Assembly: GCA_977017575.1 (NCBI GenBank)
Contig: CDRNVI010000060.1
Coordinates: 124,001-188,000, forward strand
Length of the DNA stretch: 64,000 nt
Origin: Paramoeba atlantica
Taxonomy: Eukaryota > Protista > Discosea
Direction: 5' to 3'
The notes beneath the pieces are model-generated. The model searched no databases and was not told where the DNA came from. It was given only the letters and a program-made list of their open reading frames with translations. Below are positions 4,231-57,750 of this stretch, piece after piece (within the stretch, counting starts at the first letter, position 1; every line of letters starts with the position of its first letter). The position numbers and the translations under genes were made by a program.

Positions 4231-4708
4231 ATGCCCGGGGCGCCTACGCCCTCAAACGAGAAGGCTGGTCGGAGTTCCTGAGCCTCTTCAAAGAATGTTT
4301 CTTCGTGGCAGCGCAACTCCCTACAGCAGGATTCCCCACTCTCGAAGCAAATCCTCCATGGCCTCCACAGCACCACTTCTCTACCTCCACAGCACCACTT
4401 CCACACCCCTGCCTTCCACTTTAACCCTACACCGGGACCAGATCCAGGATCACACCCGCATAGCTTCGCGCCAATTTACGCGCCCGAGGAGGGCAGCCCC
4501 CTGGATTACGGGGCGAAGGTATACTCATTACCCTAGACCTTGGCCCCGAACGGGCCGGACGAATTCGAGTTCCTTGCGAAGCTTCAACCTCCTTTTCAGA
4601 CATCCTGGGGATCGTGGGGTATACCATTGGGGTGCCCGACGAGAGCCTACTCCTCAAGGACACATCTGGGGAAGTGACCCACATTACAGATCGGGAGAGT
4701 TTCTGTAC

Positions 4709-4733
4709 AAGATACAGTTTCTGTACCTTGTTG
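4709..4733 (+). other. Relict spliced-leader exon sequence
   Basis: AAGATACAGTTTCTGTACCTTGTTG contains the kinetoplastid/diplonemid SL core ACAGTTTCTGTAC and ends in TTG. It is followed by TTC rather than GT, so it is a processed copy and not an SL RNA gene. Confidence 0.85.
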
Positions 4734-5345
4734 TTCATCCTTTCTTTCCCCGGCAACGGGCATAGTCTAACTGTTCATATGCCCGTTGCCGGCCGGCACT
4801 AAGGCTGAAACTGTTCCTCTTTCTCGGCGAAGTAGGGGACGCGCTTCTACCCCATCACCCCTCCCCGGCACTAAGGTCGGGACTGTCCCTCTTTTCGTTG
4901 AAGCAGGGGACGCGCCTTTCACCCTTCGCCCCTCCCCGACTCACTCTCCTGGAGTGAGTGTGCTTCCCTCTCTCGGCTTTTCTTTCTCGTGTCTACCTTT
5001 CCGAGGAGGCAATGCGTCACGGTGGCCTCCCTTGAGGACCACTAGACGTGTCCTTCGCTACGACTTCCGGCTCTCCGCACCTGGCGGTCACCCAGCTCTC
5101 CGCACCTCGGCTCTGTCGCAGCTCTCTTCACCCGGATTGCCCCCGAAACTGTAATATGGGGATTACGCATCCGGCTCTCTGCACCTGCACATGACAACCG
5201 AGCTCTCTGCACCTGGGACGCCAGCTCTCTGCACCCTCTTGCCACAGGCGAAGGCGAACTCTCACGTGATCCACCCGTCGTATGCGGGGTAAGGACATGT
5301 AGTGAGGCAAATCTCTGCACTATAAGTGCATGAAAAAACAACAAC
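4709..5345 (+). mobile_element. SL-headed short non-coding retroelement (SINE-like, about 640 bp)
   Basis: Starts with the SL relic, has a 15-bp stem at 4750-4792 and internal GCTCTCTGCACC repeats, and ends AAATCTCTGCAC-TATAA-GTGCATGA plus an A/CAA tail. It splits an otherwise continuous CRE ORF. Homologous fragments at 41883, 49099 (same 3' end) and 57532. Confidence 0.75.
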
Positions 5346-7353
5346 AAAATGCGCCCAAAGGATCTCTGTACGCCTGACCCTACCACCAGGCAGCACAGGA
5401 TACATCGACACCAAAGCAATACGAGTGTACGACGGTACATTCCAAGGCAGCCTCTTAGCGCCGGGCATAGGAGCCGCACATGTTATCCCTGCCTTCCTCA
5501 GCAAACAAATAGGAATTCTCGATATCCTAACCGTAGCTTGGAAGCCCAAGGAATACGAGGACGGGATTTTATGGAGCTTCTTATCTTCCGAATCCCTCAT
5601 CAGCGAAACAGGACGGTCCGCCCATATAATCAAGTGCAACCTGCGCAGGGGCTACATTGAAGCCAACCCGGGACGCCGCCATAGAAATCCCCCTCCAAGG
5701 GCGGGCCACCCCACTGGCCAGCGAGACGATCTTGGAGGGCATTGCGACCGCGCCCAACGTCGCCAGCCCTCCCCACACTACGGCCCGGGACGGAGACTCA
5801 GTCCAAGACATACATTTGTATGCCCCCGATAGGAGGCGAACCCACAAACCCAAGTCGCTCAAACCGAGGAGCTAGGATAAGCCCCCTTCCCCGAAAGTCT
5901 GGCGGAGCTATTGGGGAGGGAGTCCTTGCGAAAATTATATATTTGTATGAGGTGCAATGCCCCGCCTGGCGGGAGTACGTGGCTAGCGTTTGTCACAACT
6001 CCCACTTCAAATCGCAAGAGGAGAGAATCGTAATTGCATGGAACCTCCTCCTCCTCCTCCTCGTAGTCAAACGCTTCCTCTTCTTCCCTGAGGATACGCT
6101 GTCACAACGACATCTAGCACGCGAATTTCGTATGCGTCCCCACCTCGAGCGGTCGGAAACCTTGGCTCCGACCCCCACCGCGGAAAATAGATCCCCCATG
6201 TCAGCAATAAAACGAGCGGAGGAGCTCGTAAGGGCGGGAGCTTTCTCGAGGGCGGCCGCAAGATCCCCCGGCCAACGCCACGGCTGCCCTCGAACAGGCG
6301 GAACGCCTGCATCCAACAGGGGGGACCTTCCTCCCCAATTCGGAGCGCAATACACTCAGGGCTGCAAACACATTGTCCACAATTTCAAGGGATACAGTTT
6401 GGATCCCAATACAACGTGTATACTCAACGGTGTGAGCACATCGTCTAAGCATTTACAGAATGCCCGACAGCATTTTCGAGACAGACCGGAGGTTGTCATT
6501 GTGGCTGCAGACCTTGAAAATGCTTTCAATAGCATCTCGCGGTAAGCTCTCTTCCGGGCCCTAAAGGGAGACCCGAAACTTCTCGGTTTCGAGGAGAAAG
6601 AAAAGTGGGAAGACTAGCAACCTCTGGGAGGAGGCACATCCATTATGAGCTCCCGGAGGGTAAATCAAGTCGACACCAAGCAAACCACGACCCCAATCCC
6701 TTTCGCCATAGGGAATCGCCTAGGGAATTTTCGCCTTCAGGATCCATGGCGCCATAGCCAAGATGGAGGCCTAATTCCCAGTATCCCGGTCACTAAAGGT
6801 CACTATAGTGGCAAATTCTCAGAAATCTCAAAATCGATCAAGCCGTCCTACTACATGCGGGACGCCGAGTTGGAAAAGGCAGCCGGCCTCCGGTATCGGG
6901 TCGCCCCGATTTCAGAATGTGAGCTCCAGTACTTTTGCGGCACAACCATTCGAAACAAGATTTTCAACCCTCCAATGTATATATTGAAAAAAAGAATATT
7001 ATTCTTCTTTTTATTATACTGATTTTAGTATTAAGAATATAAGAGTTTACTATGGTTTGTACCGTACGCTTAGAAAAGGAAACTGCGGAATTGATCCCAT
7101 GAAACGTGCTTACAAAGCGGATCAATCATTGCACCCCTATCATACATACACGACAGAAGCCAATACAAGACAAAATATTCGATACTACATGTGAGTAATA
7201 TAAAATACAAAAGACGTGGAGCTCCAATATACGACAGTAGCTGCGGCATTATCCACTCACGTCAACTCTCGTCTCTCAAAGATGTACCCATTATTGCCCA
7301 TTACCTTCCATCGGCAATCCTAGAGACATCTACGGTGATCCCTGCCCTCTTCT

Positions 7354-9795: not shown

Positions 9796-9974
9796 ATGTT
9801 TATGGATTAAAAAATATCCAGTCTAAAGTGGGCGAGGGAGATACCAAGAGGGCAAGTGCGGCAGATTCCCACAAGAAAACCGGTATCTCCCTTGTGATAT
9901 CCGAAATCGAATCCCAATTATTCAAGATTGCCACGGACTGTCACTGATAAGCTAGGCCCTTCACACAGCTTGAG

Positions 9975-10100
9975 GGAGCTGGTTCCCTGAGGGGAAGGTC
10001 CGGGACAGTCCTTCCAGTACCAGGCCTGGTCGGATCTCGGCCCAGCCCTCTTAGAGTGAGGCCGCCGGGTATTATACGATGAGCGGGGTTCGAATTAGCC
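9975..10100 (-). mobile_element. Fragment of tRNA-derived SINE-like family B
   Basis: Reverse complement matches about 42105-42230 (ccgctcatcg...cactctaagag...cagggaaccagctccct). Confidence 0.6.
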
Positions 10101-10162
10101 GTAAAGATTTCCGAACCTATTTCAGCGGGCTCTAGGGTAGGGGGGCACAAGGGTAGTAGGGA

Positions 10163-10331
10163 GCGAATGGCAAGAATGGAGTACATGGTGCTTAGACGGC
10201 GAGTTCGATTCTCGCTTATCGCATAACACCTGACATGGAAGAGGACATCTGCCTCGGAACTTCCAAATCTGTCTGTGAAGGGTGTGGCTTGCCAGTGCCC
10301 GTCCGGGGAAATCCGGACTGATTTGGATTTT
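10163..10331 (+). mobile_element. Internally deleted copy of tRNA-derived SINE-like family B
   Basis: A-box-like TGGCAAGAATGG and perfect T-arm GCGAG-TTCGATT-CTCGC; 3' end cctcggaacttccaaatctgtctgtgaag...gatttggatttt is shared with 42057..42430. Confidence 0.6.
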
Positions 10332-30055: not shown

Positions 30056-31143
30056 TTGTATCATACAGGTAATCCTGCAGAGATTTATGTGGTGAAAACG
30101 CGCACAAAACGCGTTTTAGTCACCTGTTTCTATCCAGCGTCACCAAGAACGTTCTCCTCCATCCAATTTTGGTCATTGCGGTTTTGATATACTATGAAGC
30201 TCCCTCTCAGAGCCTTCACGGTCATATTGCGCCGGCACTCAGCCACCAGCTCATCATTACCCATAAATAGAGAGTTCAGAGTTCGACCAGCACTGCTTAT
30301 TTTTCCTCTCGCTCCGACTTCGAAAACGAGTAGGAAAGTGCTCGGGTTTGTGAGCTTGCGGGAATGGTAGAGATTTGTGTACTAGGCAGTTTTTCGTTCG
30401 TGTGCGTAGACAAAATTTTCCTCCCAGGGGGCACGTCAATTCTATAATATACTGCTCCCCGTTGGACATTTTCACCCACCCATCCGGTCGCAGCTCGGTG
30501 TCGAGTTCCGTGAGCCACGGAGGGGTAGAGCGAAAGTGAGGGAGGTCAAAGTGACTAGACTGGTCCCTTGGAATTTCTGCACAGAGTTTGCGAGGGCTTG
30601 TAGCACCATGTTATGTCGCAGAGTATATCGTCCTTGCTCGAGTGCTTTTCTACACCCGGAGAGAATATGTCGCGCGGTTCGCGTTTCAGTATCGCAGATG
30701 GGACACTTGTCGCTTGTGTGTGTCGATACGCCCCATTTGCGGAGAGACACTCTAGTGGGGAGTGGCGTTCCTGTGAGTACGGAAGCCGTAAATCGTGATA
30801 GCGATTCGCTTTTGAGATTACATAGGGCGGCAGCGAAGTCCCTCGCGAGGTCTGCTTCCGTCGCTACGCGGAACCATCTTCCCGCAACTAAAGTGCGCCT
30901 TTGCACGGCTTCCGAAAGATGCCTCTCATATTCACTGTCGAGAAGTCGTAGTACGTTATTGTGAGTTGAACGAGGTTCCAACCATGCTCGGTGTACAACA
31001 GTTCGCTTGTCGCGGATTTTGCTACATTTAACCATTTTCTGATTTCATTTGTAGCGCATCGCTGGAGGCGCAGAACGTGGTTAAAAGTCAGACATGAATT
31101 GACAAAAAAAGAGTAGCGAAGGCGGGAGATAATACCATTATTG

Positions 31144-32046
31144 CGGTGGTTGTAAAACTACCGCTCTACACTCGATTATTGAAAAAAAAGTGAACAAAAA
31201 CAGTGAAAATATAAAGAGGAACACAGTAATATAATAGAAGAAAAAAATATAAAAGGGGGCTCCGGTGGACCAAAACTGAAAAAAAAATTTGAAAAAAATG
31301 GGGGGTCCATGGGGGGGGTCCAGAGGGGGGGTCCAGGGGGGGGGGGCATGGTCGAGCAAATTTTTTCGAAAAAATTAGTTTTCGAAAAAAAACCGCAGAA
31401 AGGGTAGCCGGGGTCTTGGCGCGTATTTTCCACCCCCCTACCCGGGGGTGACCCCCCCGCGTATCCGCATGACGGGTCCGCCAAGTTCGGATTTTTTCGG
31501 AAAAATTTTTTTGAAAAAAAATTCAACTTGGCGAAAAAAATGACAAAAAAAATATTTTTCCAAAATCGTTTCCCCTATTGTATTTTGATAGTTTGGGACC
31601 TACACTAGCTTTCTACGCAGTTGTTTTCGCAAGGTATCACTTCTTCGAACCGTGGTGCGCCCCTCAAAATGACACATTTTTGACTAAAAAAGGTGAAAAA
31701 GTATTTTTCGGACCTAAAGGGGCATTTTTGTGTCGAAAGAATGGTATGGTTGGAGTCGTATTCTTTACCGAATACGTTCGGTAGGCTTTCATTCATGCCT
31801 GCGAGTGATTTCCCACGCGCAAATGTCGGATTTAGTGCTCTGAGAGCAAAAATATGCGAAAATGACCCCATTTGTACCCGAAATTCGGCTATTTTTGGCT
31901 ATAATCTTTCCGTTTTCCAGGTTAAATTTTCTTTTTTAGGCTCTTCGTTAAACGCGGCGGTAGTTTTCAACGCGAAGCGCGCAGCATGAGTGACTTCTAA
32001 GTTGAAAGCAACCACCGCGTTTAACGAAGAGCCTAAAAAAGAAAAT
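31144..32046. mobile_element. Non-coding insertion of about 900 bp with hairpin ends (Helentron/HINE-like or foldback)
   Basis: Removing it restores WIY-NNGIISRLRY, homologous to WIHQHAIISRLRF of the intact element. TTG is present on both sides. Left end CGGTGGTT-GTA-AAACTACCG; right end 48-bp arms (31924-31971 and 32001-32048, 45/48 complementary). Confidence 0.75.
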
Positions 32047-35000
32047 TTGTATATCCAGAGTCGGGCGGGTAGGTCGTGGGCGCTGGAAGATATGTTGCGT
32101 AACCAGGTACGGAGTCGATTGCGTAGCTTTAGGAACAGAATTTTACCATGCTGGGCACCAGGTGCGAGAGTCATACCCAGGAATGTGCTACCATTATCGC
32201 ATATTTGAGGAATAGGTGTTGCGTCAATCATTATCTGCGGTCGTCTTGTCATGTAGCCTGAGTCTTGAGTCATTGCCATGTGTTGAATCCAACATTTCTT
32301 TGCGTTCAATTTCATTCCGATGTCGCCTAGAACTTTGACCAGTACGTTCGTGGCAATTTGCATTTCCTTTGGTGTGTTCGTGAGTATACTGAGGTCGTCA
32401 GCAAAGGCCTTCAGAAAGGTTTCCTTTCCATCCCAAGTGATTCCGTACTGTGGGCAACTTGAACGGATGAAGCGAAGAACCAATTCCATTGCCAAGTTGA
32501 ATAAGATCGGCGACAGTGTATCTCCTTGTAATACTCCACGGCCGATCTCGATCGACTTCGTAAGGCCTTCAGCACACTTGATTTGAATAGATGCTCCTTT
32601 ATACTGCGCGCTGATATAGTTAATTAGAATTGGGGAGACACGGGCCCATTTTAGGGATTGTAACAGTACTGCGTGGGGGATAGATCCGAAAGCGTTCTTG
32701 ATATCGAACTGTGCCAGTAAGTATTGCCGTTTGTGACGTCGTTGGTGTTCAAGGAGCTCGCATAAGACTTGTGTATGCTCGACGGTCCCATTCATGTGTG
32801 GTAGAAATCCTTTTTGTACTGATGTATCGAGCGCATGAGAATCCAAGGAATGTTGAAGGATTCGGTGGCTCAGGATTGAATGGAAAAGTTTCCTTATGCA
32901 ACTAGTTAAGCTTATCGGCCGCCAATTCTCCATAGTTGATGTAGGACCTCCTTTGTGTATGAGGCGAGTTACGGCAGATTTCCAGGTGGGGGGGCAAACC
33001 CCGAATTTAAGGATATCATTGAATACTTGAGCTATGTGGACAAAGATAGGGCTACAACGCTTGAGTAGAGCGTTTGATACAGTGTCTGATCCAGGAGCAG
33101 CGCCCGAGCGCTTGGAAGATACAGCAGATGCTATCATTTCGGCGTCAATATCCGACCATGGCATGTCGATGTCAGGCCGTGGTCCGAAGAACTCGGCGGG
33201 GGGTATGCTGTGATTCTCTTCAGGTTTTGACAATGATGCCGCGAAGTTCTCAACCTCTTGAAGAGGTACTGTAGGGTAAGACGTCTCGGGTCCCTGGATT
33301 GGGTCAGTGCGATCTAGGCATTCGCCCGCAGCTGTCCACGGGTTTCTCTGGAACCGAGTTAATGCCCATCGTCGATCGATTTCCCTCTTCTGTAGATTGG
33401 CTTCCTCCACGTACAACTTCAACGCTTTCTCTGCTTCCTTAATTTCTCCTCGCTGCTTGTTTCTCGCGGCCCCCTTCATGAAGGTAAGTGCACGTTTGAG
33501 TTGACGAACATGTGTGCGAAGCCTCTTCGTGGTACGTTCGATGGCCAAGGGCCGTGAGTTTCTTCTGGCTCTGCCAGCTCTGGTTCGCAGGAGAAAGCGG
33601 TGTGTCGGGTCGCTCTCCCGTGCGGCTTCAAAGACGGTTACGGCGAGGATCGCGGATAATGTTTTAGCTTGAGACAGGGCATCCTCATCGTTTCGCGCTG
33701 GGTGCACGTACAAGTTGCAACGTTCCTCAATTTTCGCAATACTATTGCCCCACTGTTCCTCTGTAAAACGTACCAGAACTCGTCCTCCCGTTATTGTGTC
33801 AAATGTTTCGAGAAGATTCTGCAGGTCAGGAATGGGATGAATGGTTGGGGCTGGGGCGTGCTGGGATCGAGGGATCCTCTGCAGTGTCGTGCGTCTGCGA
33901 TTTACTTCCGGTGGGGGAGGTAAAGGTAAAGGCAAAGGCAAAGGCGCGGGTTCTGCTACGGATTCCATACGTGGTACAGAAGGTGAGGAATCCGGTTGCG
34001 TCTCGTGGGCTGGTGGGAAATGTCGTAGAGGGCTGGACAGTGGACTCGTGCGGGGCAGGGAGTTGGTGCGAACTGGTAGGCGGGGTGTCACGACTGGGGC
34101 GGGCGGTTCCGAAGCTTGTGAAGAAACTGCAGCGCGTTCGGCATCACCAAGCGCAGGGAATAGAATATTTTTCGCCGTCCAGCTTATGGCAGAGTATGCG
34201 ATTTCGCCAGCTTTGAGGAGAACTCCTTTTTGACAACATGAATGCTTACATTTGGTTTTGTCTTTACATTTATGTGCGCAATTACGGCGAGGGACTGATT
34301 CAGGGGGGATATTGCCATCTCTACTAACATGAGGTTCCGGGGAAGTGCGTGTATGAGAGAGTTCGTGGTTTACAGCCTGCGTACCGCTCAAGTTTCCTGT
34401 CTCGGATGGCCAGCTAGGGTGATTCTGTGGTGATATTATGCTAGCATCGGCAGGAGATGTCCTCGTAAACAAATTCCTGAGTGACCATATTCGATTCTGA
34501 CCGTTTTCTTCGACGATCATGACCCCTGTCTTGCAACATTGGTGTTTGCACTGAGTTTTATTGCTGCATACATACTTATTGTATGTGCCGACACGGGTGA
34601 TAGTTGGCCGTGTTTGCTGATATTATGGCGGACGACGGCGGATGACCGGTTGGCAGATCCTCATACTGGGCCTCTTCGCTCGGTATGGCCTCTGTCGAGA
34701 CTTGCGGATCGGTTTCTATCGATGTGGACTATGTGACCGTGTTAGTGATGACTCCCCGAGGTGCCGTTCTGGTCGAGGATTTTCAGTAGCACCCGTAATG
34801 AGGACTCCTATTTTGCAGCACTGGTGCAAACAATTTGTCTTGTCGCGGCACGTATGCTTACAGGGCCTTCTGCCGGGAGCTAGTGAACTGTCTATAGCCA
34901 CGGCTTCCGAAGAGGGAGGAGGGACGCTAGGATGCACAGACCTTTCGGGTTTCACTTTGCAACATACGTGAAGGCATGCTGCTTTGTCCCGGCATTTATG

Positions 35001-35681
35001 GGCACAAGGGACACTTGGTTTAGTGGGCGGTAGTTTTGACACCTTGACGGGAGCATCACGGATTCTATATGGCGCGTCGTATGTGACCTCCGAGCAACGT
35101 TGGAGTTGTTCAATGGGTTGGGCCTTACGGGTCACGTGTGATATGCGGAATCGTCGTAAGCCTGGCATGTCACCGCCGCGCAATTTCTTTGTGACGGCTT
35201 TGCCAAGCGCGTTCGAGGAGGAGTATTCTGTGTCAAGCTGCATGTCGGGGTCTGTATAAGCAGAGCTCCAGCTCGTGTGATGAAATGTGCGACTAAGGTT
35301 TCCAATTTCATGGTACTCAACGTACTCGCATGCATCGTTCTCGATGACATCTTGAGTGGTACACGTTTGTACTATCGGACCATCGCTCCTTTTGCTTCCC
35401 GACTTCAGGGTTTTTCCGAGGGAAGCTTCTGCTGTGTGCGTGCTTGAGAAAAACTCTCGTTCGGTAAGGGTGATGGCTGCGGCGTGCGTGTCGGGAAAAT
35501 AGGACCATGAAAAGCCATCAGAGGGGCGGATCTTCACTGGCACCGCACGACTTCGGACGAAGTGAAAGTTCTGGGGGTGTCGCTTCGCGCTGACAGGTCC
35601 TCGAGGGAGGCCGTCGTGCGCGTGGGGAGCTGGGGGTGTGACATTAGAGATCATGCTCCGAAAGATAAGTTTAGTACAAAG

Positions 35682-35711
35682 CAACAAGGTACAGAAACTG
35701 TATCTTTATAG
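35682..35711 (-). other. Relict spliced-leader exon at the 5' end of the retrotransposon
   Basis: Minus strand (CTATA)AAGATACAGTTTCTGTACCTTGTTG, 27 nt upstream of the ATG at 35654. Confidence 0.88.
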
Positions 35712-35726
35712 AAGCCATAATATCTT

Positions 35727-41869: not shown

Positions 41870-41882
41870 GATACAGTTTCTC

Positions 41883-42030
41883 AAAGACACAGTTCCTGTA
41901 CCTTGTTGTACTTTTTCTCCTAGTTCATCTTTTCTCTCTCGGAAACGGACATATTGTCACTATGTTCATGCCCGTTTCCGGATGGCGCTAGGAGAGGAAC
42001 TGTCCCTCTTGTCACAAATTAGGGGTGCGC
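41883..42030 (+). mobile_element. 5' fragment of the SL-headed short element, with a degenerate SL relic at 41883..41908
   Basis: AAAGACACAGTTCCTGTACCTTGTTG, then tactttttctcctAG-ttcatc and the hairpin cggaaacggacat/atgcccgtttccg, homologous to 4734-4830. Confidence 0.78.
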
Positions 42031-42056
42031 CTCCAAAGGCGGAGGTGGCGGAGAAG

Positions 42057-43450: not shown

Positions 43451-43619
43451 ATGTGGCTTTTGGAACCAATACGACATACGTCAAATCTCGCAAAGCACAA
43501 CTACTCAGGGCTCTGAAAATATATTATATATACATATTATATGTACAGTGAACATTAACTGTATACATACAATACAGTGACAGTAACTTAATCGCAGGGA
43601 ACTACCTATCAGCCGCCCA

Positions 43620-45374: not shown

Positions 45375-47006
45375 CCTAGCGCGGTTAGATAATCTGCGTC
45401 GGGAGATGAATAAAAAAACGGACTGCAACCGGACTCCGGCTCACAACGCATCGGATCCCCGAAGAAGAAACGCCGAAGACAAATGCTACGGAGCAATTAG
45501 AAGCGGTAGACGGCTCCATGGAACCGGAACTGGTGATTTCCAAGCAGGAGTAACTGAGTCAGGCAATTGCCGAAGAGGAATTGCTAACAGAATATGCCCA
45601 CGACTGCAAAGTTGCGAAATACTCCAGAATCTGGAGTGCAGATTATATCACACACGGAAACTGCAACACCTATGCACGTTTGTCTTGATTTCCGAGGTGG
45701 GTGCTAGGGGGAAACTCGCTAGCTCCATTCGACCGCTCAAATCTCTTTTTATGGGAGACAACCATCTTGTTTTTGGGTGTTGGAAGGAAATGATGAGAAG
45801 TGCCCAGCGTGGCAGCTTCATCATATTCAAAAAACGCGACTTAAAGACTTGGAACAGTGAACCACGGTTCGCTGAGGTCGCCTAAAGTTAAATTGATAAC
45901 ACGCTTTCTGTGCGCGTGTTCTGGACATTTGTTTTCCTGGATCTATTTATAAACGATCTCTTCACTTTAAGTGTATGACAAATAGATAGATAAACACACG
46001 CCCTGATCTTTAAATGCATACCTTAAGTGCGTATCTTTAAAAGATTGCAAATATAAGTCAAGGAGGACCAGCTTATCGAGTATCTATCGTACAAGACCTA
46101 TCTCCATACATGTACCTACATGTTTCGTATCATACATAATCACCAATCATGCTTCTTGCTCGTACTTACATACGAGTGATATCTGCGTACAACTATGTCG
46201 AGAATTCCAATTCAATTTATTCCATTCTGCGACATCAAAGTCGCCGACAAGCTCCTTGTTATTCGTAAAAAATATTTCCTTCATTGTCTCCGGAAGCTTG
46301 CCAAACAAAAGTCGGGTAAGTTTATTCGAACTGACATCAACAATTGATAACCAGGACTACTTGGAAAGCTTGGCTTCGCACTTAAGGCCTACTATCGGCA
46401 CCTCTGCAAGCAACGTAAAAGTAAACTATGAGAAAGTTCAGCAGCAAGACCCGCTAATGAATGAAAGGTTAAGCGCATCATTTTCTTTATCATGGATTTT
46501 ATTTATATTGTAAGATAACTGAACGGAAAGGAGATAAATAAAGGAAGATAATGGGGGACAGATAACGGGGATCATGAACGCTATAAAACATGATCATAGG
46601 GAACAAGAAAATTCAAAAGTCACACGAAAAAACCGAAAATAATTTATTTTTAACAATAAACGAGCCCCCCCTTTAGGTGGAATAAAGACCTCTCACGCGG
46701 GGCTTCAAAACACTGCTTTTACCAAAGAGGCCCTGAACCTCCTTAACAGGCACCCATTCCTACCTAACACATTGATCCTTTTCAACATCTGATTTTAGGA
46801 ACGCAACGTGGAAAAGATTTATTGCTAGGAAAATGGGAAAAAGAATCATTAGGGATTGTTATACATTAGGGATTGTTGTATCTTGAATGTTCAGTTGAAA
46901 TATATGACATTAGAGACCGCAACGTGCAACTTTGTTTACTGCGGAATAAACCTAGTCCAGAAACAGGGAGAAATCTCGTGGCTTGCAGATCCAGAGGTTA
47001 CGCGTA

Positions 47007-48861: not shown

Positions 48862-50062
48862 TTATTTGAAAATTACTTTTGTACCTTGCGTAATGAGGTC
48901 GTCCAATAACTTAGGAAGTATGGAACGGTCAATTTCACCTTCAAGTTCATTATTATCCACGAATAACAGTCGTGTCATTTGTGGTGGGAGCTTATCGAAA
49001 AATACTTTTCCGCTGAAAAGGTTATTCTCGCACTCCAGCACCTCCAACGAAGCGGGTTGATGCCGCAAATCTAGCGTTCCGAAAAATTGATTGTTTGAGT
49101 TGTTCGTTCATGCACTTATAGTGCAGAGATTATGCTCACAAAGTCCGTGCCCGCATACGACGGGTGGATCAAGTGAGGGTTCGCCCTCGCCGGAGGTGTG
49201 CGGGTGCAGAGAGCTGGGGTCCCAGGTGCAGAGAGCTCGGTTGTCATGTGCAGGTGCAGAGAGCCGGATGCGTAATCCCCATATTACAGTTTCGGGGGCA
49301 ATCCGGGTGCAGAGAGCTGCGACAGAGCCGAGGTGCGGAGAGCTTGGCGACCCCCAGGTGCGGAGAGCCGGGAGTCTCGTCGGCGGAGGACACGCCTAGT
49401 GGTCCTCAAGGGAGGCCACCGTGACGCATGGCCTCTTCGGAAAGGTAACTGCGAGAGAAGGGAAAGCCGAGAGAGGGAAGCACACTCACTCCAGGGGAGT
49501 GAGTCGGGAAGGGATGAAGGGGTGGAAGCGCGTCCCATATTAGCCAAGTGACAGAGGGCAAGTTACTTAGATTAACATTACCTGTAAATGCGTTATCCGA
49601 AAGGTCTAATGATACGAAGTTCGCTGGGAATTGACTCAAATCTACCTCTCCCGACAAATCATTCTCCTGGACCCACAGCTCTTGCATATTTTGCGGTAAG
49701 TTAGATAAGTCCACGCCACCTGTAAACGCATTTGCCCCTAATTGGAAAATGCAAAGCGCGGACGGAAGGCTATCCAATTTCACCTCTCCACTAAGCCTAT
49801 TTTCAAACAAATAGCAGTTCTCGAGCGTTCGTGGGAGATAATCGCAGGCTGGGGAACCCGTCATGGGAATCCCCAGCATGCCCTGTCCCACCATTCTCCC
49901 ATAGGGGGACCAATCCATTAGCGTCACACGCTCGCCGTGCTCACAGGCAATACCCTCCCACTCACACGCGGGGGTGTCCGTGTTCCAGCTCGACGGTTTG
50001 AAGAAAGCGTATCCTCGATACTTTGAGTTTTCAGAATGTTTATACGATTTTTTAAAGTCCAA
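48862..50062 (-). pseudogene. LRR gene duplicate split by an SL-SINE insertion
   Basis: Near-identical to 62925..63625 on both sides of the 438-bp insertion at 49099..49536. Confidence 0.9.
49099..49536 (-). mobile_element. 5'-truncated copy of the SL-headed short element
   Basis: Reverse complement matches about 4907-5345 and ends aatctctgcactataagtgcatgaacgaacaac. The empty site is visible in the paralog at about 63160, where 2 bp have been lost. Confidence 0.9.
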
Positions 50063-50373: not shown

Positions 50374-50659
50374 CTACAATACAGTAATTGTAACACATTC
50401 TGGAATTGGCCAAGACTGCACTTCCAAATCGCAGATATTTCCTTTCAAATTCAAATCTTTCATTGTTGCTGGTAAGGCGTCAAATGCTACTTTTCCCGTA
50501 AAAGCGTTGTTCCCAAGGGAAGGTGTACGCATAAACGGCGGAAGGGAGCGCAGAACCAACTCACCATTCAACTTATTACCGGTCAAGTGCAAAACTGTAA
50601 GTTCTTTCGGGAGACAGGTTAAGTTTATACTCCCAACAAAAAGATTTTCATGCAGTATT
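50374..50659 (-). pseudogene. 3' part of the LRR gene disrupted by the intact retrotransposon
   Basis: ILHEN(frameshift)FVGSINLTCLPKELTVLHLTGNKLNGELVLRSLPP. Confidence 0.8.
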
Positions 50660-50740
50660 TATATCTATACAGGGCATTACCTGTAGAGTAATAAAGTCTA
50701 ACAGGACGTACGCATATGACGTCGCCTGCTAGACCATTTG

Positions 50741-53700
50741 CTAACCAAAGCTTTGGTTGTCCCATAAAGGGGATTCCCTTTTCAGCCAGAGTTGAAAGCT
50801 GCTCCGGATCGCCGTTCGGATGACTTCGACACGGCACTTATCTGAGAGTGCCTTGTCACCCAAAAAGAGACGGTTGATGTGACGCAGCGTCGTAGAAGGG
50901 AGACCTCTAGCTCCAACTTCAAAGCATATCAAGTGGCAGTCTGAGTACCTTATCTTTCGTCGGTGTAGAATATTTATGTACTTTTCTACTTTTCGGCAGT
51001 GGGCTTCGTGTACGTTTTCCTCCCAGGGCATCGTCAACTCAACGATAAATTCAGTTCCGTCGTTGAGTTTGACGATTCCATCTGGGCGAAGCTGTGTTTC
51101 CAGGTCGGACCACCATGCGGGTAGTTGACGTAGGTGTGGGAGATCAAAATGTGCCTCTGCGGTATGGGGGGAAGAGAGTATCGCGTTTGCAAAGGTGGAG
51201 AGTACACAATCGTGGCGATATGTGTAACGTCCCTGTTCTAGTGATACCTTGCACGAGGATAAGAGGTGTCGTAATGTTTCCGGTTCTTGTTTACAAATTC
51301 GGCATTGTACTGTATCTGTGCCGTGAATTCCCCATGTCCTCAGCATTGTCCTAGTAGGGAGAGTGTTTTGTACCATTAAAGAAGTTGCGAAGCGGCTAAG
51401 GGAAGTGCTACGTAATCCGTTTATCGCGGCGCTGAAATCTTTCGCCTGTTCTTCCTCGGAGGCTATATCCCACCACTGAATAGCGAACGTTGACCTGCGG
51501 CGTAGTGCGTTGATCATTCGGTCCTCATTAAGCTCAAGAAGAGTTCGTTTTGCGAGATCGCGATCGTCCAGTATGTGTGTGATGTCACATGCTGGTCGAA
51601 TTTGGCCTTTCCTGCGCTTATGTTCTTCAGCCCGTATTCTTTCCTGCAGTGCGGCGGTAACGTTCGGGTCTCGGGACCGCTTCATTTGACAGAGAAGATC
51701 AGCTGTACAGTCCTCCCAGAGTCTGGACAAGCTGCAGATGTTCCATCCACGCTGAGAGTAGATTGCTTCGCTGCATGTAGTTCTAGCCGCATTGATCCAC
51801 CGTTTCAGGGAGTGAGTACACATTTTCTGAAGGCGTAAAATAAAGTTTAGAGTGATACATGGGTGTATAGTAAAGGTGAAGCGTAGCCGAGAGATGATTG
51901 CGTGTTGATGTATCCAAATTTTTGATGGGAGGTCGTGGGCCGACTGGTCAATGTTATGAAGCCATCGCTTCAATAAGGGCCTAACTTTCGTGAAAAGGGC
52001 TCGGGATTGTTGAGAACCGGGGGCAATATTCATGCCAAGAAACGTACTTCCTTCGTCGCATATATGCGGTATAGCTTCGTTCTTGATGAAAATTTGAGGA
52101 CGTCGTGTCATGTAGCCGGGGTGTTCATCATTTTTCTTGGACGCCATGCATTGGACTCTGCACTTTTTGACGTTGATGGAAAGGCCAAGCGAACCCAGTA
52201 CCGTGGATAGTGTTTCAACAGCCAGTTGCATTTCTTTTTCACTATTCGTCAGGACCGTGAGATCGTCGGCGTACGCTTTTAGGAAGCTTTTTGGAAATCC
52301 AGGGAGGTTCAATCCAAATGAGGGAAATGATTTTGCCATGTAACGTAGGGCTAGCTCCATAATCACCAGAAAGAGCGTAGGAGAGAGAGTGTCACCTTGT
52401 AAGACACCTCGTTTAGCTGGGATCGCGCTGGACAGACCTTCGTAACATTTAATGCGGGTACTTGCGTCAGTGTATAAGCATTGGACGTATTTAATAATGT
52501 TTGGGGAGATTCTCGCCCATTCCAGTGCTTCAAAGATGATGTTGCGGGGGACTGAACCAAAGGCGTTACTGAGGTCTAGCTGGGCCATGCAGTAGTTCCA
52601 CTTGTTCTTCCGGTAGTGGCGTAGGAGCTCTGAGAGGGATTGCGTATGTTCGAGAGTACCGTTAATGGCGGGGAGAAAGCCTTTCTGTATCTTGGGGTCA
52701 ATGACAGAGGCTTCAAGTAGGAATTTCGTCATTTTCCGGCTGATGATGGAATGCAGGAGTTTCCCTAGTACGCTAGTCAGGCCGATGGGACGCCAGTTTT
52801 GTGGGTTGTCAGGCTCCCCTTTTTTGTAAATGAGGCGAGTGACGGATATTTTCCATGACGTCGGACATGTGCTGAAGCGCACTAGCGCGTTGAAGACGTT
52901 TGCCATGTGCGTGTGGGAGCTGTGGCATCGCTTTAGAGTCTGGTACGTAATGGAGTCCTGGCCTGGAGCACTGCTGTTTTTCTTTGATGTGAGAGCGTTC
53001 GAAATGTCGATTGAAGCCAGTTCGTCCCAGGTCATTTCTGCCAGAGGACGGTTTCCGAGGACGTCGTGGGGTGGTAAGTGATGCACTGTAGTGGGGTCCG
53101 TAAGTAATGTTGTGAACACACTTTCCACTTTCTGTACATTGCAAGTCGGATAGGCCGGTACACTTTCTGCTTCTGTCCTTTTGTCCAAGGTTTGACTCGC
53201 AGCCGTCCATGGATTGCGGTTGAATTGTTGAAGTGCCCAGCGACTTTCCAGTTCCTGTTTTTGGGCCATGGCTTCTGCGCTGTATATACGTTCCGCCTTT
53301 TTGGTTTCCTTAATCTTTTGTTTCAACGCCATGCGGGGAGCCTTGCCGTGTGTGTATCGCAGCTTCATTTGTAGTTGTTTTACATGTCGAGAGAAGGAAA
53401 AGGCAACTTTTTCGCTTTCTAATGGACGGACTTTCCCCTTTATGTGTCCTCGAGCCGTTCGGATAATGAAACCCTTCCTGGAGTCGACGTCTCGCGCCAC
53501 TTCATATGCCGACACCGCTAGTATTGCACTCAGTAGTTCTGCGTTATGGACGGCGGAGAGTGCGTCGCCAGAGACAGTGAGCAAGGTGTTGCATCTGTGG
53601 AGGGCCCTACGTTCCACCTCGTGCCAGTGCGCATCGGCCAAGTTTATGTTTAACTTGCCCCCCTGGATGTATCGTGCCGTGCGGAAAAGGTACTCCGTCT

Positions 53701-56191
53701 CGTCGAGTGGTCTCGGAGAGGAAGCGGAAGTGGGGGGGTTAAGTTCGGGGTGTTCTTGCTCTTGTCCTGCGTTGGGGCTCCCCTCAGAGTCTCCTTCGAT
53801 TCCCTGATCGAGGGATGGTCCATAGATTTTGCAGCATGGATGGCTGCATTTGAGTTTACTTATGCATCGATGTTGGCATGGGTGCGTCCGCTTCAAGGAG
53901 GAGGCGTGGTCACGCGAAATAATCTCGTATGGTGGAAGTGTTGGGACCATTTGGGGCTTTGATGGCTGTACTTCTTCTTTGTCGTCGGTGCGAAGGAGCA
54001 GAACGATCCGAAACGCCGATAACCCAGGGACCGCTCTCCCGTTCAGTACCTTATTTACCGCTTTACCCATTGAGCTAGGTGATGCGTAGTGGTTGTATAA
54101 TTCCAGGCGGCTGTCGTGAAAAAGAGATACCCAGTTCGCGTGGCGAGAAATGTGACTTGTTGAGTCTACTCTACTAACTTCTAAAAAGTCACACGCTCTC
54201 TTTTCCATAAGTTCGTCTACGGTACACGTTTCTACGACGATGTCGTGTGCTGCACTTTTCCCATTGAGCGCTTTGGACAGGGCGGCTTCAGCCCCCTGGG
54301 GGGAAGGGATACGACTACGCACAAGTTGGCTTACGCATGCTGCATGCACATCCGGGAAATATCTCCATGTGTTGTCGTTGACGAGGCGGAGTTTGACAGG
54401 TTTTGACCGGGACTGGATAAAGTGGAAACGTTGCTTGTGTCGGTTATGGGTTACGGGATGCGTGGGGTCCTGGGGCGGCGGGAGATACTGTGACGGGCTG
54501 TCGGGAGTTTGTGTGGGAATCTGGGGACCCTCGGATTCATCCGAATGTAAATGGGCGTCCAGTTGTGATGGGGGTAAGAGGCTTCCTTGTTCAAGCGGCG
54601 GGCTTTGTATTCGACCTACGCTGTGCGCTTGTTGGAAAACCCAGGATGGGACTTCGTCATCGCCATTCTCATTCCGCGGACTGTGTTGGTGTGCTGGGGA
54701 AGATGAGTCCAAGAGAATGATACTTTCCGGTGCCTTGTTTTTGGGAGTCGGGATGGCTGGTTCCCTGGCAACGGCACGGTCAGCTGTCGTAGTGGTTGTG
54801 TTTAGGGACGGTGTGACGAGATTCTTGGGAAGGGTACATGGGCCGGTGGGTAGAGTATCCTGCCCATCCAGTTTGCTTATCGGTGTGTCAAGCGAAGTCA
54901 ACGGTGTGCCAGTGCGTTTGCAGCAAGGATGGCCGCACCCTGCCTTGTTCTTACATTTATGCTTACAGGGCTCGACACGGTCTGCTTGTTCGGAGGCGGG
55001 GCCTAGGCCTTGCTTGCAACACACGTGCTTACATTGATCTTTACTCTTGCAGATATGCTTGCATACTCTAGTTAAGGCGTGGACCTGAAGTTGTGTTGGA
55101 GATTTAGGTTTGGGGAGGCTTTGGGAGTCCGGAGTTTGACATGGAACGCCTTTGAAAAGTAGGAATTTGGCAAGCGAGCAGGCAGTTGATGCGACGGCAC
55201 GACCGACGGTAACAGTGGGTGATTTTTGATGGGGAGCAACCTCCTTGGGTGGGGGTACATGTAAATCGTGTTCGTCTTTTGGACAGGGTGCTATTGTGTA
55301 CGACAAGCGTTCCTGTCCGGTGCTGCTGTGAGGTCGTACGGTTACCGCCGGGGTTGAGGGAGTGCCGTTAGCGTACGGTTGAGTGCGGCTTGAAAACAGA
55401 TATCGTGTTGCAGCTCGCGCTGCCATGCCAAGTAGGTTGCTTGATTTCGGTACTTTCACATCCTGTGTTACGTGGTCACGGGTGCATGGCGGTGACGTTT
55501 CGTCCCTTTGTCGCGTACTTGGAGCTTCTTTGGGCCCGGATTCTTGACCGCTCGCCGTAGTGCTCGTGAGTTCGTATGTTGTTGGTGTAAGATTACGTTT
55601 GCAACATGGGTGCCCGCAGGTCTGTTTGTTTTTACAGACATGCTTACAGGGTGTGCTACGTTGTACCGGCATTACACTCACAGCCGTGATCACCTTTACG
55701 TCTTCTCTTGCATCCACCGGTGCGTCACTTCTCTTATTGTTGTACGTATCCGGTTTTACTACGCGTACCAGGTGTCGTTTGCAGCATGGGTGTTCACAGT
55801 GAGCTTTGTCCTTGCAGCGGTGTTTGCATTCCGGAACGGTTTGTTGTGTGGTGGGGGGGACGCGGTGAGGGGGAAGTTCGTTTGTGTGAGGAGTGACCAG
55901 GATATGTGGCCGCGTTACACCCCTCTTGCAACAGGGGTGTCCGCAGGTGCTTTTGTCCTTACAAGGATGTTTGCATGGAGCTGGGGGTGCTTCTCCTGTG
56001 TCGCTGGTAAGGGACTCATTGCTCTTTTGGGATATGAGAGCCTGGACGGTTCGGGTAGCAGATTTTGCAACCCTGTCTGTGGGAGTGCCTTTCAGGGACA
56101 GGTTTTTGTTTTGGTTAGACACGTCGCGTGGTCTCTTAGGAGAGTCCTGCGACGCCTGGTGTGTGCCCTTCCCTGGTAGTAAGCAAAACAT
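50741..56191 (-). CDS. Retrotransposon polyprotein: six Cys/His modules, NUMOD1-like segment, reverse transcriptase, CCHC knuckle, restriction-like endonuclease
   Basis: RT motifs NWRPIGL, QKGFLPAINGTLEH, LDLSNAFGSVP, GVLQGDTLSP, YADDL; CRICKQEPETLRHLLSSC; RHD; RPDG...IVELTMPWE...RKVEKY...EVGARG. Confidence 0.95.
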   Translation of the reverse strand: MFCLLPGKGTHQASQDSPKRPRDVSNQNKNLSLKGTPTDRVAKSATRTVQALISQKSNESLTSDTGEAPPAPCKHPCKDKSTCGHPCCKRGVTRPHILVTPHTNELPPHRVPPTTQQTVPECKHRCKDKAHCEHPCCKRHLVRVVKPDTYNNKRSDAPVDAREDVKVITAVSVMPVQRSTPCKHVCKNKQTCGHPCCKRNLTPTTYELTSTTASGQESGPKEAPSTRQRDETSPPCTRDHVTQDVKVPKSSNLLGMAARAATRYLFSSRTQPYANGTPSTPAVTVRPHSSTGQERLSYTIAPCPKDEHDLHVPPPKEVAPHQKSPTVTVGRAVASTACSLAKFLLFKGVPCQTPDSQSLPKPKSPTQLQVHALTRVCKHICKSKDQCKHVCCKQGLGPASEQADRVEPCKHKCKNKAGCGHPCCKRTGTPLTSLDTPISKLDGQDTLPTGPCTLPKNLVTPSLNTTTTTADRAVAREPAIPTPKNKAPESIILLDSSSPAHQHSPRNENGDDEVPSWVFQQAHSVGRIQSPPLEQGSLLPPSQLDAHLHSDESEGPQIPTQTPDSPSQYLPPPQDPTHPVTHNRHKQRFHFIQSRSKPVKLRLVNDNTWRYFPDVHAACVSQLVRSRIPSPQGAEAALSKALNGKSAAHDIVVETCTVDELMEKRACDFLEVSRVDSTSHISRHANWVSLFHDSRLELYNHYASPSSMGKAVNKVLNGRAVPGLSAFRIVLLLRTDDKEEVQPSKPQMVPTLPPYEIISRDHASSLKRTHPCQHRCISKLKCSHPCCKIYGPSLDQGIEGDSEGSPNAGQEQEHPELNPPTSASSPRPLDETEYLFRTARYIQGGKLNINLADAHWHEVERRALHRCNTLLTVSGDALSAVHNAELLSAILAVSAYEVARDVDSRKGFIIRTARGHIKGKVRPLESEKVAFSFSRHVKQLQMKLRYTHGKAPRMALKQKIKETKKAERIYSAEAMAQKQELESRWALQQFNRNPWTAASQTLDKRTEAESVPAYPTCNVQKVESVFTTLLTDPTTVHHLPPHDVLGNRPLAEMTWDELASIDISNALTSKKNSSAPGQDSITYQTLKRCHSSHTHMANVFNALVRFSTCPTSWKISVTRLIYKKGEPDNPQNWRPIGLTSVLGKLLHSIISRKMTKFLLEASVIDPKIQKGFLPAINGTLEHTQSLSELLRHYRKNKWNYCMAQLDLSNAFGSVPRNIIFEALEWARISPNIIKYVQCLYTDASTRIKCYEGLSSAIPAKRGVLQGDTLSPTLFLVIMELALRYMAKSFPSFGLNLPGFPKSFLKAYADDLTVLTNSEKEMQLAVETLSTVLGSLGLSINVKKCRVQCMASKKNDEHPGYMTRRPQIFIKNEAIPHICDEGSTFLGMNIAPGSQQSRALFTKVRPLLKRWLHNIDQSAHDLPSKIWIHQHAIISRLRFTFTIHPCITLNFILRLQKMCTHSLKRWINAARTTCSEAIYSQRGWNICSLSRLWEDCTADLLCQMKRSRDPNVTAALQERIRAEEHKRRKGQIRPACDITHILDDRDLAKRTLLELNEDRMINALRRRSTFAIQWWDIASEEEQAKDFSAAINGLRSTSLSRFATSLMVQNTLPTRTMLRTWGIHGTDTVQCRICKQEPETLRHLLSSCKVSLEQGRYTYRHDCVLSTFANAILSSPHTAEAHFDLPHLRQLPAWWSDLETQLRPDGIVKLNDGTEFIVELTMPWEENVHEAHCRKVEKYINILHRRKIRYSDCHLICFEVGARGLPSTTLRHINRLFLGDKALSDKCRVEVIRTAIRSSFQLWLKRESPLWDNQSFG

Positions 56192-56219
56192 GTCGTTGTA
56201 AAGGGTAGGGAAAAGAAAA

Positions 56220-56237
56220 CAACAAGGTACAGAAACT
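56220..56237 (-). other. Relict spliced-leader exon (3' 18 nt) at the 5' end of the intact retrotransposon
   Basis: Minus strand AGTTTCTGTACCTTGTTG, preceded by aaaga, 28 nt upstream of the ATG. Confidence 0.82.
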
Positions 56238-56243
56238 TTCTTT

Positions 56244-57531: not shown

Positions 57532-57750
57532 TACTTTTTCTGCTTAGTTCATCCTTTCTTGCCCACGCAACGAGCGTACCGTTATCAAAATTTCATGCCC
57601 AGTATTCATGCCCTTTCCCTGCCGGTACTAAGACTGGAACTGTCCCCTTTTCTTGCTGAAGCGGTAGACGCCTCTCGATCCCTTGACCCCTCCCAGCCAC
57701 TCCCGTGGAGTGAGTGCTTCCCTCCCAGCTTCTTTCTTGTCCACGTTTAC
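57532..57750 (+). mobile_element. Diverged 5' fragment of the SL-SINE family retaining its splice acceptor and lacking an SL
   Basis: tactttttctgcttAG-ttcatcctttct...gccggtactaagactggaactgtcc...gtggagtgagtgcttccctc matches 4734-4975 and 41909-42010. Confidence 0.65.

What the first reader, a model, noticed from the sequence alone, without database searches (positions are those of the whole stretch)
4709..4740. Spliced and unspliced forms of the same element are both fixed in the genome
Seen: at 4733/4734 the SL is joined directly to ttcatcc. Copies at 41909-41929 (tactttttctcctAG|ttcatc) and 57532-57554 (tactttttctgcttAG|ttcatcc) keep a pyrimidine tract and AG immediately before the same sequence. 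The 41883 copy carries its own SL 15 nt further upstream. Known: trans-splicing joins the SL at AG acceptors; relict SLs from mRNA recycling are described in dinoflagellates. Inference: the element cycles through trans-spliced RNA, using alternative acceptors, and is reverse-transcribed up to the SL.
Basis: partly seen in the sequence, partly recalled or inferred. Interest (0 to 1): 0.85.

Follow-up and report, generated by a model that had tools for sequence, protein, structure and literature searches.

The report
Retroposon copy re-spliced at internal acceptor
A short mobile element in a kinetoplastid-type protist normally begins with a DNA copy of the cell's spliced leader plus a 15-base pyrimidine-AG piece; in this copy the leader sits exactly after where that AG should be, which looks like a record of trans-splicing followed by reverse transcription, though no RNA data were available to confirm it.

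Summary
At 4733/4734 a 25-nt copy of the 3' part of a kinetoplastid-type spliced leader (SL) abuts TTCATCC, the start of a ~610-nt non-coding retroposon. Copies B (41909-41923) and C (57532-57547) carry a TAC-pyrimidine-AG piece before the same sequence.

I fetched ~155 kb more from an ENA assembly of the same or a sister genome. Of six 5'-complete copies:
- four have SL + 14-16-nt piece + body;
- one (C) has the piece but no clear SL;
- only copy A has the SL directly after the AG position.

A's closest relatives (85-94% identical) keep the piece, so A is derived. All 18 SL relics seen end exactly at the exon/donor boundary of an SL RNA gene found in a metagenome contig.

Best reading: a piece-bearing source RNA was trans-spliced at its internal AG, then reverse-transcribed by an R2-type LINE.

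The "unspliced form" label is not supported. B has its own SL, and C's homology begins exactly at the upstream SL junction. No RNA evidence was available.

The scan has found this before on other DNA of this genome (s1-381656, and many notes on SL-headed retroelements). I found no published report for Euglenozoa. The nearest precedent is dinoflagellate relict-SL retrogenes.

The parts
4701..4733 (+). SL relic heading copy A. 4709-4733 (25 nt) is an exact copy of the SL 3' part and ends at the exon's last base. 4701-4708 is SL-like with mismatches.
   Evidence: The exon boundary is defined by L001.
4734..5341 (+). Body of the non-coding retroposon (SINE-like), copy A. It starts TTCATCC and ends in the family's 3' terminus CACTATAAGTGCATGAA plus an A-rich tail.
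   Evidence: In one search the depth at 4693-5363 is 50-100x that of the flanks, and the unique downstream contig starts at 5312.
4748..4796 (+). Strong hairpin in the 5' module: 15 consecutive base pairs plus 2 outer pairs.
   Evidence: -29.9 kcal/mol, z = -5.8. Copy B keeps it with a paired C-G to A-U change.
41870..41908 (+). Copy B: a partial SL core (41870-81, GATACAGTTTCT) followed by an SL relic (41882-41908, about 26 nt, 2 mismatches).
41909..41923 (+). 15-nt TAC-pyrimidine-AG piece of copy B, lying between the SL relic and TTCATC.
41924..42035 (+). 5' module of copy B. Homology to A stops here; unrelated DNA follows, including an element with 177-nt inverted repeats (42252-45111).
45643..45985 (+). 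Probable 3' part of the B insertion: a LINE C-terminal coding remnant (45643-45861) and the family's 3' terminus CACTTTAAGTGTATGAC (45963-45979). That this belongs to B is inferred.
57532..57547 (+). 16-nt TAC-pyrimidine-AG piece of copy C. There is no clear SL upstream.
57548..57750 (+). Copy C: an old 5' fragment of the element (about 70% identical to A). It has no 3' terminus, and its flanks match nothing else in the window.
49099..49564 (-). Copy D: a 5'-truncated copy (87% identical to A) inside an LRR gene.
50645..56243 (-). Intact R2-type LINE (1816-aa ORF at 50741-56191) with an SL relic at 56220-56243. LRR coding sequence lies on both flanks.
30058..35714 (-). Second R2-type LINE (broken ORF) with an SL relic at 35682-35709 (ATAAAG...TTG, 28 nt) and a 20-nt tandem duplication upstream. 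Its 3' terminus (ATCTCTGCA-hairpin-ATGA) matches the SINE's, and LRR coding sequence lies on both flanks.

Best explanation
**What it is.** 4709-5341 is one copy of a SINE-like, non-coding retroposon that shares its 3' terminus with R2-type (RLE) LINEs present in the same window. Those LINEs mobilise it by target-primed reverse transcription.

**The normal head.** The family's RNA carries the host's spliced leader. Genomic copies therefore begin with a 20-32-nt DNA relic of the leader's 3' part. In the normal form this is followed by a 14-16-nt piece, (G)TAC + pyrimidines + AG, and then TTCATCC...

**Copy A.** Together with the pyrimidine-rich leader relic upstream of it, that piece looks like a kinetoplastid 3' splice site. 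In the lineage of copy A, a transcript of a piece-bearing source copy was trans-spliced at this internal AG. The old relic and the piece were discarded as the 'intron' side, and a fresh leader was joined to TTCATCC. That RNA was then reverse-transcribed almost to its 5' end and integrated.

**Shown**
- the sequences and junctions;
- that the leader relic ends at the exon boundary;
- that the AG is present in all other copies;
- that A is derived from piece-bearing relatives;
- that the leader lies inside inserted units.

**Inferred**
- the RNA splicing event itself;
- which LINE supplied the reverse transcriptase;
- how the normal SL + piece form regains its leader each round.
For: 1. **Real SL exon.** L001 carries ...GATAAAGATACAGTTTCTGTACCTTGTTG|GTATGA next to a 5S rRNA gene. 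Relics in L002 extend to CTTTAACGATAAAG..., identical to that exon.
2. **Exon boundary.** All 18 clear relics in the window and in seven ENA loci end exactly at ...CCTTGTTG with no intron sequence, and are followed by at least six different sequences.
3. **The SL is inside the insertion.** Both R2-type LINEs have LRR coding sequence on both flanks.
4. **Census of six 5'-complete copies**:
   - four are SL + piece + body (window B, L002, L007, L008);
   - C has the piece only;
   - A has the SL directly on the body.
   - The AG is present in 5 of 5 piece-bearing copies and is always the first AG after the pyrimidine run.
5. **Background rate.** Only 0.2% of window positions follow such a site; 6% follow any AG.
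6. **A is derived.** A is 94% identical to L008 over the 5' module and 85-89% to L007, and both keep the piece. B and C are not sisters yet both have the piece.
7. **Independent 5' ends.** Relic lengths vary from 20 to 38 nt, which fits independent 5' ends made from RNAs carrying a full leader.
8. **LINE/SINE partnership.** The shared 3' terminus, a 5'-truncated copy and insertion at the same phase of the LRR repeat fit trans-mobilisation by the LINEs. The LINE matches R2 proteins at E = 2e-30.
9. **Read support.** Contigs from three runs confirm A's flank-SL-body junction.
Against: - **No RNA evidence.** The one possible RNA run laid nothing on this stretch.
- **Small sample.** Only one A-type copy was seen directly. 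The contig break at 4738 suggests at least one more copy or allele, but that is indirect.
- **Local composition.** The region behind the leader is pyrimidine-rich in all these elements, so the local chance of a pyrimidine run is higher than 0.2%. The safe figure is the roughly 6% for AG alone.
- **The normal form is unexplained.** The SL|(G)TAC junction has no demonstrable AG (C has CGG|TAC). If piece-bearing copies were routinely re-spliced at the internal AG, A-type should be common, yet it is 1 in 6.
- **A counter-example.** A second pair of alternative junctions, LINE 35701 against L003, differs by about 12 nt and is not at an AG.
Confidence: 0.78

Rival explanations
1. Copy A arose from a normal SL + piece copy by an ordinary DNA deletion of the 15-16 nt between the leader relic and TTCATCC, with no splicing involved.
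For: Small indels are common at these 5' ends: a 20-nt tandem duplication at 35715-35734, a duplicated SL tail in L005, and a 1-nt G difference at the junction among copies. One base of microhomology (G) exists at both breakpoints.
Against: Both breakpoints would have to fall exactly at the exon's last base and directly after the AG. That is roughly 1 in 200 even before counting the pyrimidine run, whereas trans-splicing predicts exactly this product.
Confidence: 0.09
2. The leader was added by the reverse transcriptase jumping from the 5' end of the element RNA onto another leader-bearing RNA, not by splicing. Junctions then mark RNA 5' ends, not acceptors.
For: - From memory, not checked here: R2-type reverse transcriptases jump between templates end to end (Bibillo and Eickbush).
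- Head-to-tail element joints exist: 5341 -> 11 nt -> 4709 in two runs, and a SINE 3' end 8 nt before the L007 SL relic.
- Partial SL cores lie upstream of the relics of A, B and L008-2755.
Against: A jump has no reason to start copying exactly at the exon's last base, yet 18 of 18 relics end there without intron or other mRNA sequence. It also does not explain why A's junction lies exactly after the conserved AG.
Confidence: 0.06
3. The leader sequence is an insertion target, as for CRE/SLACS/CZAR elements that land in SL RNA genes. On this view the SL belongs to the target of the upstream element, not to the retroposon.
For: A and B each lie directly downstream of other coding sequence on the same strand. 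These flanks share a ~55-aa domain (E = 6e-7), and A's flank belongs to an RT-bearing element. CRE-clade LINEs target SL genes (PMC12278014).
Against: - There is no SL intron after any element.
- Both LINEs have LRR coding sequence on both flanks, with the SL inside the insertion.
- The position where the relic begins varies from 20 to 38 nt rather than being fixed.
- Even if upstream elements do land in relics, that does not explain the SL|TTCATCC joint.
Confidence: 0.04

Closest known systems
Relict spliced leaders in dinoflagellate retrogenes ('mRNA recycling'; e.g. PMC6050394, PMC5585692, PMC12014239)
   Same: A DNA-encoded leader sits at the 5' end of retroposed units outside SL genes. 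This is taken as proof that a trans-spliced RNA was reverse-transcribed. Later rounds of splicing can occur at a site inside or behind the old relic.
   Different: Here the host is a kinetoplastid-type protist and the tagged units are retrotransposons (R2-type LINEs and their SINE-like partner), not ordinary genes. The re-splicing site is a dedicated pyrimidine-AG piece behind the relic, not an AG inside the leader.
CRE/SLACS/CZAR LINEs of trypanosomatids (PMC12278014)
   Same: RLE-type LINEs of Euglenozoa that are found next to SL sequence.
   Different: Those elements insert at one fixed position of SL RNA genes, so the SL is their target. Here the SL relic is the 5' head of the inserted unit, its length varies, no intron follows, and the targets are LRR genes.
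Perkinsela sp. dispersed SL RNA gene fragments near retrotransposons (PMC5601477, Supplementary Note 1.3)
   Same: A kinetoplastid genome littered with SL-derived pieces, some of them beside retrotransposons.
   Different: The Perkinsela pieces are SL RNA gene fragments: mini-exon plus intron, or stand-alone introns. They are copies of SL RNA itself, not exon-only leaders joined to another transcript.
R2 LINEs and LINE-dependent deletion derivatives such as SIDER, RIME and NARTc (from memory)
   Same: R2-like RT and C-terminal region, a 3' terminus shared between LINE and short partner, 5'-truncated copies, and a preferred target motif.
   Different: From memory, R2 frees its 5' end with an HDV-like ribozyme and targets rDNA. 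No ribozyme was detected here, the 5' end is the host leader, and the targets are LRR genes.

Membership tests
Relict-SL retrocopy (dinoflagellate-type mRNA recycling) | DNA-encoded leader at the 5' end of a retroposed unit, outside an SL RNA gene | tested here: met
   None of the 4 window relics is followed by a GT donor. The LINE insertions are flanked on both sides by LRR coding sequence.
Relict-SL retrocopy (dinoflagellate-type mRNA recycling) | Relic ends exactly at the exon's 3' boundary, with no intron sequence | tested here: met
   18 of 18 relics end at ...CCTTGTTG. L001 shows ...CCTTGTTG|GTATGA.
Relict-SL retrocopy (dinoflagellate-type mRNA recycling) | Junction coincides with a 3' splice acceptor in copies that keep the upstream sequence | tested here: met
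   The AG is present directly before the A junction in 5 of 5 piece-bearing copies. For the upstream junction SL|(G)TAC, and for LINE 35701 against L003, this is not met or not testable.
Relict-SL retrocopy (dinoflagellate-type mRNA recycling) | The leader is added to the transcript by trans-splicing (RNA evidence) | not testable with these tools
SINE / LINE-dependent non-autonomous retroposon | Short, non-coding, with a 3' end shared with an autonomous LINE | tested here: met
   About 610 nt, and the ORF tested gave only one database hit, another copy of the element. The ATCTCTGCA-hairpin-ATGA terminus is shared with LINE 35701 and with the LINE remnant of B.
SINE / LINE-dependent non-autonomous retroposon | 5'-truncated copies, and insertion at the LINE's preferred target | tested here: met
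   Copy D and L002 10102-10538 are 5'-truncated. D and both LINEs interrupt LRR genes at the same repeat phase.
SINE / LINE-dependent non-autonomous retroposon | Head derived from a Pol III gene (tRNA, 7SL or 5S) with an internal promoter (classical SINE) | tested here: not met
   Rfam gives no match over 4600-5400 or anywhere in the window. The head is an SL relic. It is therefore 'SINE-like', not a classical SINE.
CRE/SLACS/CZAR SL-gene-specific LINE insertion | Insertion at a fixed position within an SL RNA gene, with the rest of the gene (intron) downstream | tested here: not met
   Flanks are LRR genes or other elements, relic length varies from 20 to 38 nt, and no intron follows.
R2-type (RLE) LINE as the driver | RT plus C-terminal region homologous to R2 proteins | tested here: met
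   phmmer against PDB R2 chains gives E = 2e-30 over residues 265-967 of the query. Pfam finds RVT_1 and zf-RVT. The catalytic RLE residues were not examined.

The most novel reading that the evidence does not exclude
The leader relic plus the pyrimidine-AG piece may be a portable 5'-end module. On this reading, wherever a copy lands inside a polycistronic transcription unit, the relic and piece act as a ready-made 3' splice site, or the relic acts like a retroviral R repeat for a homology-guided template switch onto any mRNA's leader. Either way the element regains a full capped leader without a promoter or ribozyme of its own. That would be a new way for retrotransposons to define and renew their 5' end by using the host's trans-splicing system. 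The piece is better conserved (13 of 15 positions) than the body (62%) between B and C, and relics reach 32 nt in SINE copies whose relatives carry only 21 nt, so the leader is renewed somehow.
Probability: 0.22. Interest if true: 0.85.

Novelty: new variant of a known kind. Interest (0 to 1): 0.62.

Why it matters
Retrotransposons must rebuild a complete 5' end every generation. Known solutions are internal promoters, ribozymes and target-supplied transcription.

This genome suggests another: the host's spliced leader becomes the element's 5' end. Copy A is the one place where the splice site used can be read directly from DNA, because sister copies still hold the pyrimidine-AG that A lost. 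That ties the leader relics to real trans-splicing rather than to SL-gene targeting or template switching.

It also gives a concrete, testable site for RNA experiments. It extends the dinoflagellate 'relict leader' phenomenon to Euglenozoa and to mobile elements. And the relics are natural tags for dating and tracing retroposition in this genome.

Tried and rejected
1. **Stacked partial SLs upstream of A and B as target-site duplications of an SL-targeting LINE.** Rejected as the explanation of the junction. Relic start positions vary, and the LINEs are flanked by LRR genes. The partial SL cores at 4696-4708 and 41870-81 remain unexplained.
2. **'A-type is the majority form'.** This was my first reading of the depth profile, and I withdrew it. 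The X4 contig aligned over 4716-4869 with 17 gaps is a piece-bearing copy, and the census shows 4 of 6 copies with the piece.
3. **C as a decayed SL + piece copy.** Local alignment to the SL scores only 18, p about 0.05. An 11-nt deletion between the two GTACs would fit, but this stays a suggestion only.
4. **Upstream of B as a CRE-like LINE.** 38400-38700 is a pogo/Tc5-type HTH instead. Only a ~55-aa domain links the A and B upstream flanks.
5. **More copies by other routes.**
   - Exact-protein look-ups of window ORFs: not on record.
   - Metagenome scan with the SINE 5' body: 0 hits.
   - Findings index searched by sequence: blank.
   - Literature search for the leader sequence: 0 papers.
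6. **Rfam.** No HDV-like ribozyme or any other family.
7. **The 15-nt piece as a mutated duplicate of the SL tail TACCTTGTTG.** Only 6-7 of 10 positions match. L005 does carry an unmistakable duplicated tail, so the idea is possible but unproven.

Full report
**1. The observation**

- **Copy A:** ...AAGATACAGTTTCTGTACCTTGTTG is joined at 4733/4734 to TTCATCC.
- **Copy B:** an SL-like stretch (41882-41908) is followed by TACTTTTTCTCCTAG (41909-41923) and then TTCATC.
- **Copy C:** TACTTTTTCTGCTTAG (57532-57547) precedes TTCATCC, which starts at 57548.

The 20-mer ACAGTTTCTGTACCTTGTTG occurs four times in the window against none expected. Besides A and B, it occurs at 35682-35701 and 56220-56239 on the minus strand. 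None of the four is followed by GT, so none is an SL RNA gene.

**2. Is it the spliced leader?**

A metagenome contig (L001) carries the same sequence followed by GTATGAGAAG, which is an exon plus splice donor. A 5S rRNA gene lies on the same contig. From memory, this is the usual SL-5S linkage of bodonid-type repeats.

In loci from an ENA assembly of the same or a sister genome, relics extend upstream to CTTTAACGATAAAG..., identical to the L001 exon. The leader is therefore about 38 nt and ends ...CCTTGTTG.

All 18 clear relics found in the window and seven ENA loci end at exactly that base. They are followed by at least six unrelated sequences.

**3. What the elements are**

*The two minus-strand relics head long ORFs.*
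- The ORFs carry RVT_1 and zf-RVT domains.
- The intact one (1816 aa) matches solved R2 proteins from the RT through the C-terminal region, E = 2e-30.
- Both LINEs have LRR coding sequence on both flanks and interrupt the repeat at the same phase. The leader therefore lies inside the inserted unit, at its 5' end.

*Copy A (4734-5341) is a non-coding retroposon of about 610 nt.*
- Its 3' terminus (ATCTCTGCA, a short hairpin, then ATGA) is shared with copy D, with the 3' part attributed to copy B, and with the 3' end of LINE 35701.
- Copy D is 5'-truncated and sits inside an LRR gene.
- Read depth over 4693-5363 is 50-100 times that of the flanks.
- Rfam finds no Pol III-type head and no ribozyme.

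A is therefore a SINE-like partner of R2-type LINEs.

**4. Census of 5' ends**

A SINE-internal ORF led to an ENA assembly, ERZ24900291. Paralogues of the LINE protein then gave six more loci, about 155 kb in all.

| Copy | 5' structure |
|---|---|
| Window A | SL directly on TTCATCC |
| Window B | SL + TACTTTTTCTCCTAG + body |
| L008 | SL + TACATTTTCCCTTTAG + body |
| L007 | SL + GTACTTTTTCCTTAG + body |
| L002 | SL + GTACATTTTGCTAG + body |
| Window C | piece + body, no clear SL |

These six are all the 5'-complete copies.
- The AG is present in all five piece-bearing copies and is always the first AG after the pyrimidine run.
- Only 0.2% of window positions follow such a site, and 6% follow any AG.
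- A is 94% identical to L008 over the 5' module and 85-89% to L007.
- B and C are not sister copies, yet both have the piece.

So the piece is ancestral, and A lost exactly the stretch from the exon's last base to the AG.

It also corrects my first reading. The high-depth X4 contig aligned with 17 gaps is a piece-bearing copy, so A-type is the rare form. The break of the unique contig at 4738 suggests at least one more A-type copy or allele.

**5. Mechanism**

The product seen in A is what trans-splicing at the internal AG of a piece-bearing transcript predicts: a complete exon 3' end joined to the first base after a pyrimidine-AG. Reverse transcription and integration would follow.

Relic lengths range from 20 to 38 nt. 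In SINE copies they are 21, 25, 26, 29 and 32 nt. This fits independent 5' ends made from RNAs that carried a full leader.

The rivals fare as follows.
- **A plain DNA deletion** would need both breakpoints at exactly these two positions.
- **A template jump** onto another leader-bearing RNA would not respect the exon boundary in 18 of 18 cases.
- **SL-targeted insertion** is excluded by the flanks, and no intron follows any element.

**6. What remains open**
- No copy is demonstrably unspliced. B has its own leader. C begins exactly where the others' leader ends, and it resembles the SL only weakly upstream.
- The normal junction SL|(G)TAC has no demonstrable AG.
- If piece-bearing copies were routinely re-spliced at the internal AG, A-type would dominate. 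It does not.
- How the normal form regains its leader is therefore unknown. Possibilities are a few master copies sitting behind a real acceptor, non-AG acceptors, or a homology-guided switch onto another leader.
- A second pair of alternative junctions, LINE 35701 against the L003 LINE, differs by about 12 nt and is not at an AG.
- No RNA evidence could be obtained.

**7. Surroundings**

SL-headed copies often lie directly behind the 3' end of another element.
- A joint 5341 -> TGTGCATTGAA -> 4709 appears in two runs.
- A SINE 3' end lies 8 nt before the L007 relic, and a LINE ORF ends about 5 nt before the L008 SINE's relic.

This fits end-to-end template jumps by an R2-type RT. That property is recalled from memory, not tested here.

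The flanks upstream of A and B share a ~55-aa domain of unknown nature.

**8. Comparison and novelty**
- Dinoflagellate relict-SL retrogenes are the closest known kind (PMC6050394, PMC5585692).
- CRE/SLACS/CZAR elements use the SL gene as a target, not as a head (PMC12278014).
- The dispersed pieces in Perkinsela are SL RNA gene fragments that include intron sequence (PMC5601477).
- I found no report of leader-headed retroelements in Euglenozoa.
- The scan has noted the phenomenon repeatedly in this genome.

**9. Verdict**

This is a new variant of a known kind. Copy A is a rare, readable record of AG-dependent trans-splicing of a retroposon transcript.

Noticed in passing
window 4533-4697 and 41451-41615 (+): The flanks directly upstream of the SL relics of A and B encode a homologous ~55-aa domain (27% identity, E = 6e-7) on the same strand as the SL. 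It has no Pfam match. In A it ends 4 nt before the SL-like sequence (4701); in B, about 255 nt before (41870).
   Followed up: partly
window 4696-4708, 41870-41881; L008 2721-2734: Partial SL cores that lack the leader's 3' end (…AGTTTCTGTAC, GATACAGTTTCT, AAGATACAGTTTCT) lie just upstream of full relics. Re-splicing does not explain them. They may be template-jump products.
   Followed up: partly
runs X1 and X2 laid on window 5341 -> 4709; L007 14874-15005; L008 6223-6256: Head-to-tail joints recur: the 3' end of a SINE or LINE lies a few bases from the SL relic of the next SINE.
   Followed up: partly
L002 2284-2459, 6099-6118, 17789-17808 (-); L003 9375; L004 9626: Six relics of 28-38 nt are followed by the same AATTATTTTC. 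In L002 they are preceded by A-rich stretches and followed by ORFs, as if processed RNAs had been copied in tandem.
   Followed up: no
L005 9703-9728: An SL relic is followed by a second copy of its last 10 nt (TACCTTGTTG). This is either a stacked or a slipped leader tail.
   Followed up: no
window 35682-35701 (-) vs L003 9375-9430: Two related LINE 5' leaders differ by about 12 nt at the SL junction (SL|CTTTGTACTAAAC against SL|AATTATTTTCAATTTTGTACTAAAC). The shorter junction is not preceded by AG in the longer copy.
   Followed up: partly
window 11532-11556 (-): A decayed SL-like 25-mer (alignment score 34) lies about 340 nt upstream of the start of an LRR ORF (10575-11192). It may be a relic marking a retrocopied LRR gene.
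   Followed up: no
window 42252-45111, also 9973-10331: An element bounded by 177-nt inverted repeats (97% complementary) interrupts copy B. Related pieces lie near 10 kb. An exact GTACCTTGTTG sits inside it at 43140-43150.
   Followed up: no
window 38400-38700 and 56900-57340 (+): Transposase-like fragments lie upstream of B and of C: a pogo/Tc5-type HTH upstream of B, and a pogo-like ORF fragment upstream of C. Both were read by eye from translations.
   Followed up: no
L001 26-63 (-) and 450-568 (+): An environmental contig carries an SL RNA gene start (exon + GTATGA) beside a 5S rRNA gene. It comes from the same organism or a close relative.
   Followed up: partly
window 36505-36737: A long C/T-rich low-complexity tract (CCCCTA-like repeats) lies just beyond the upstream (5') flank of LINE 35701.
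   Followed up: no
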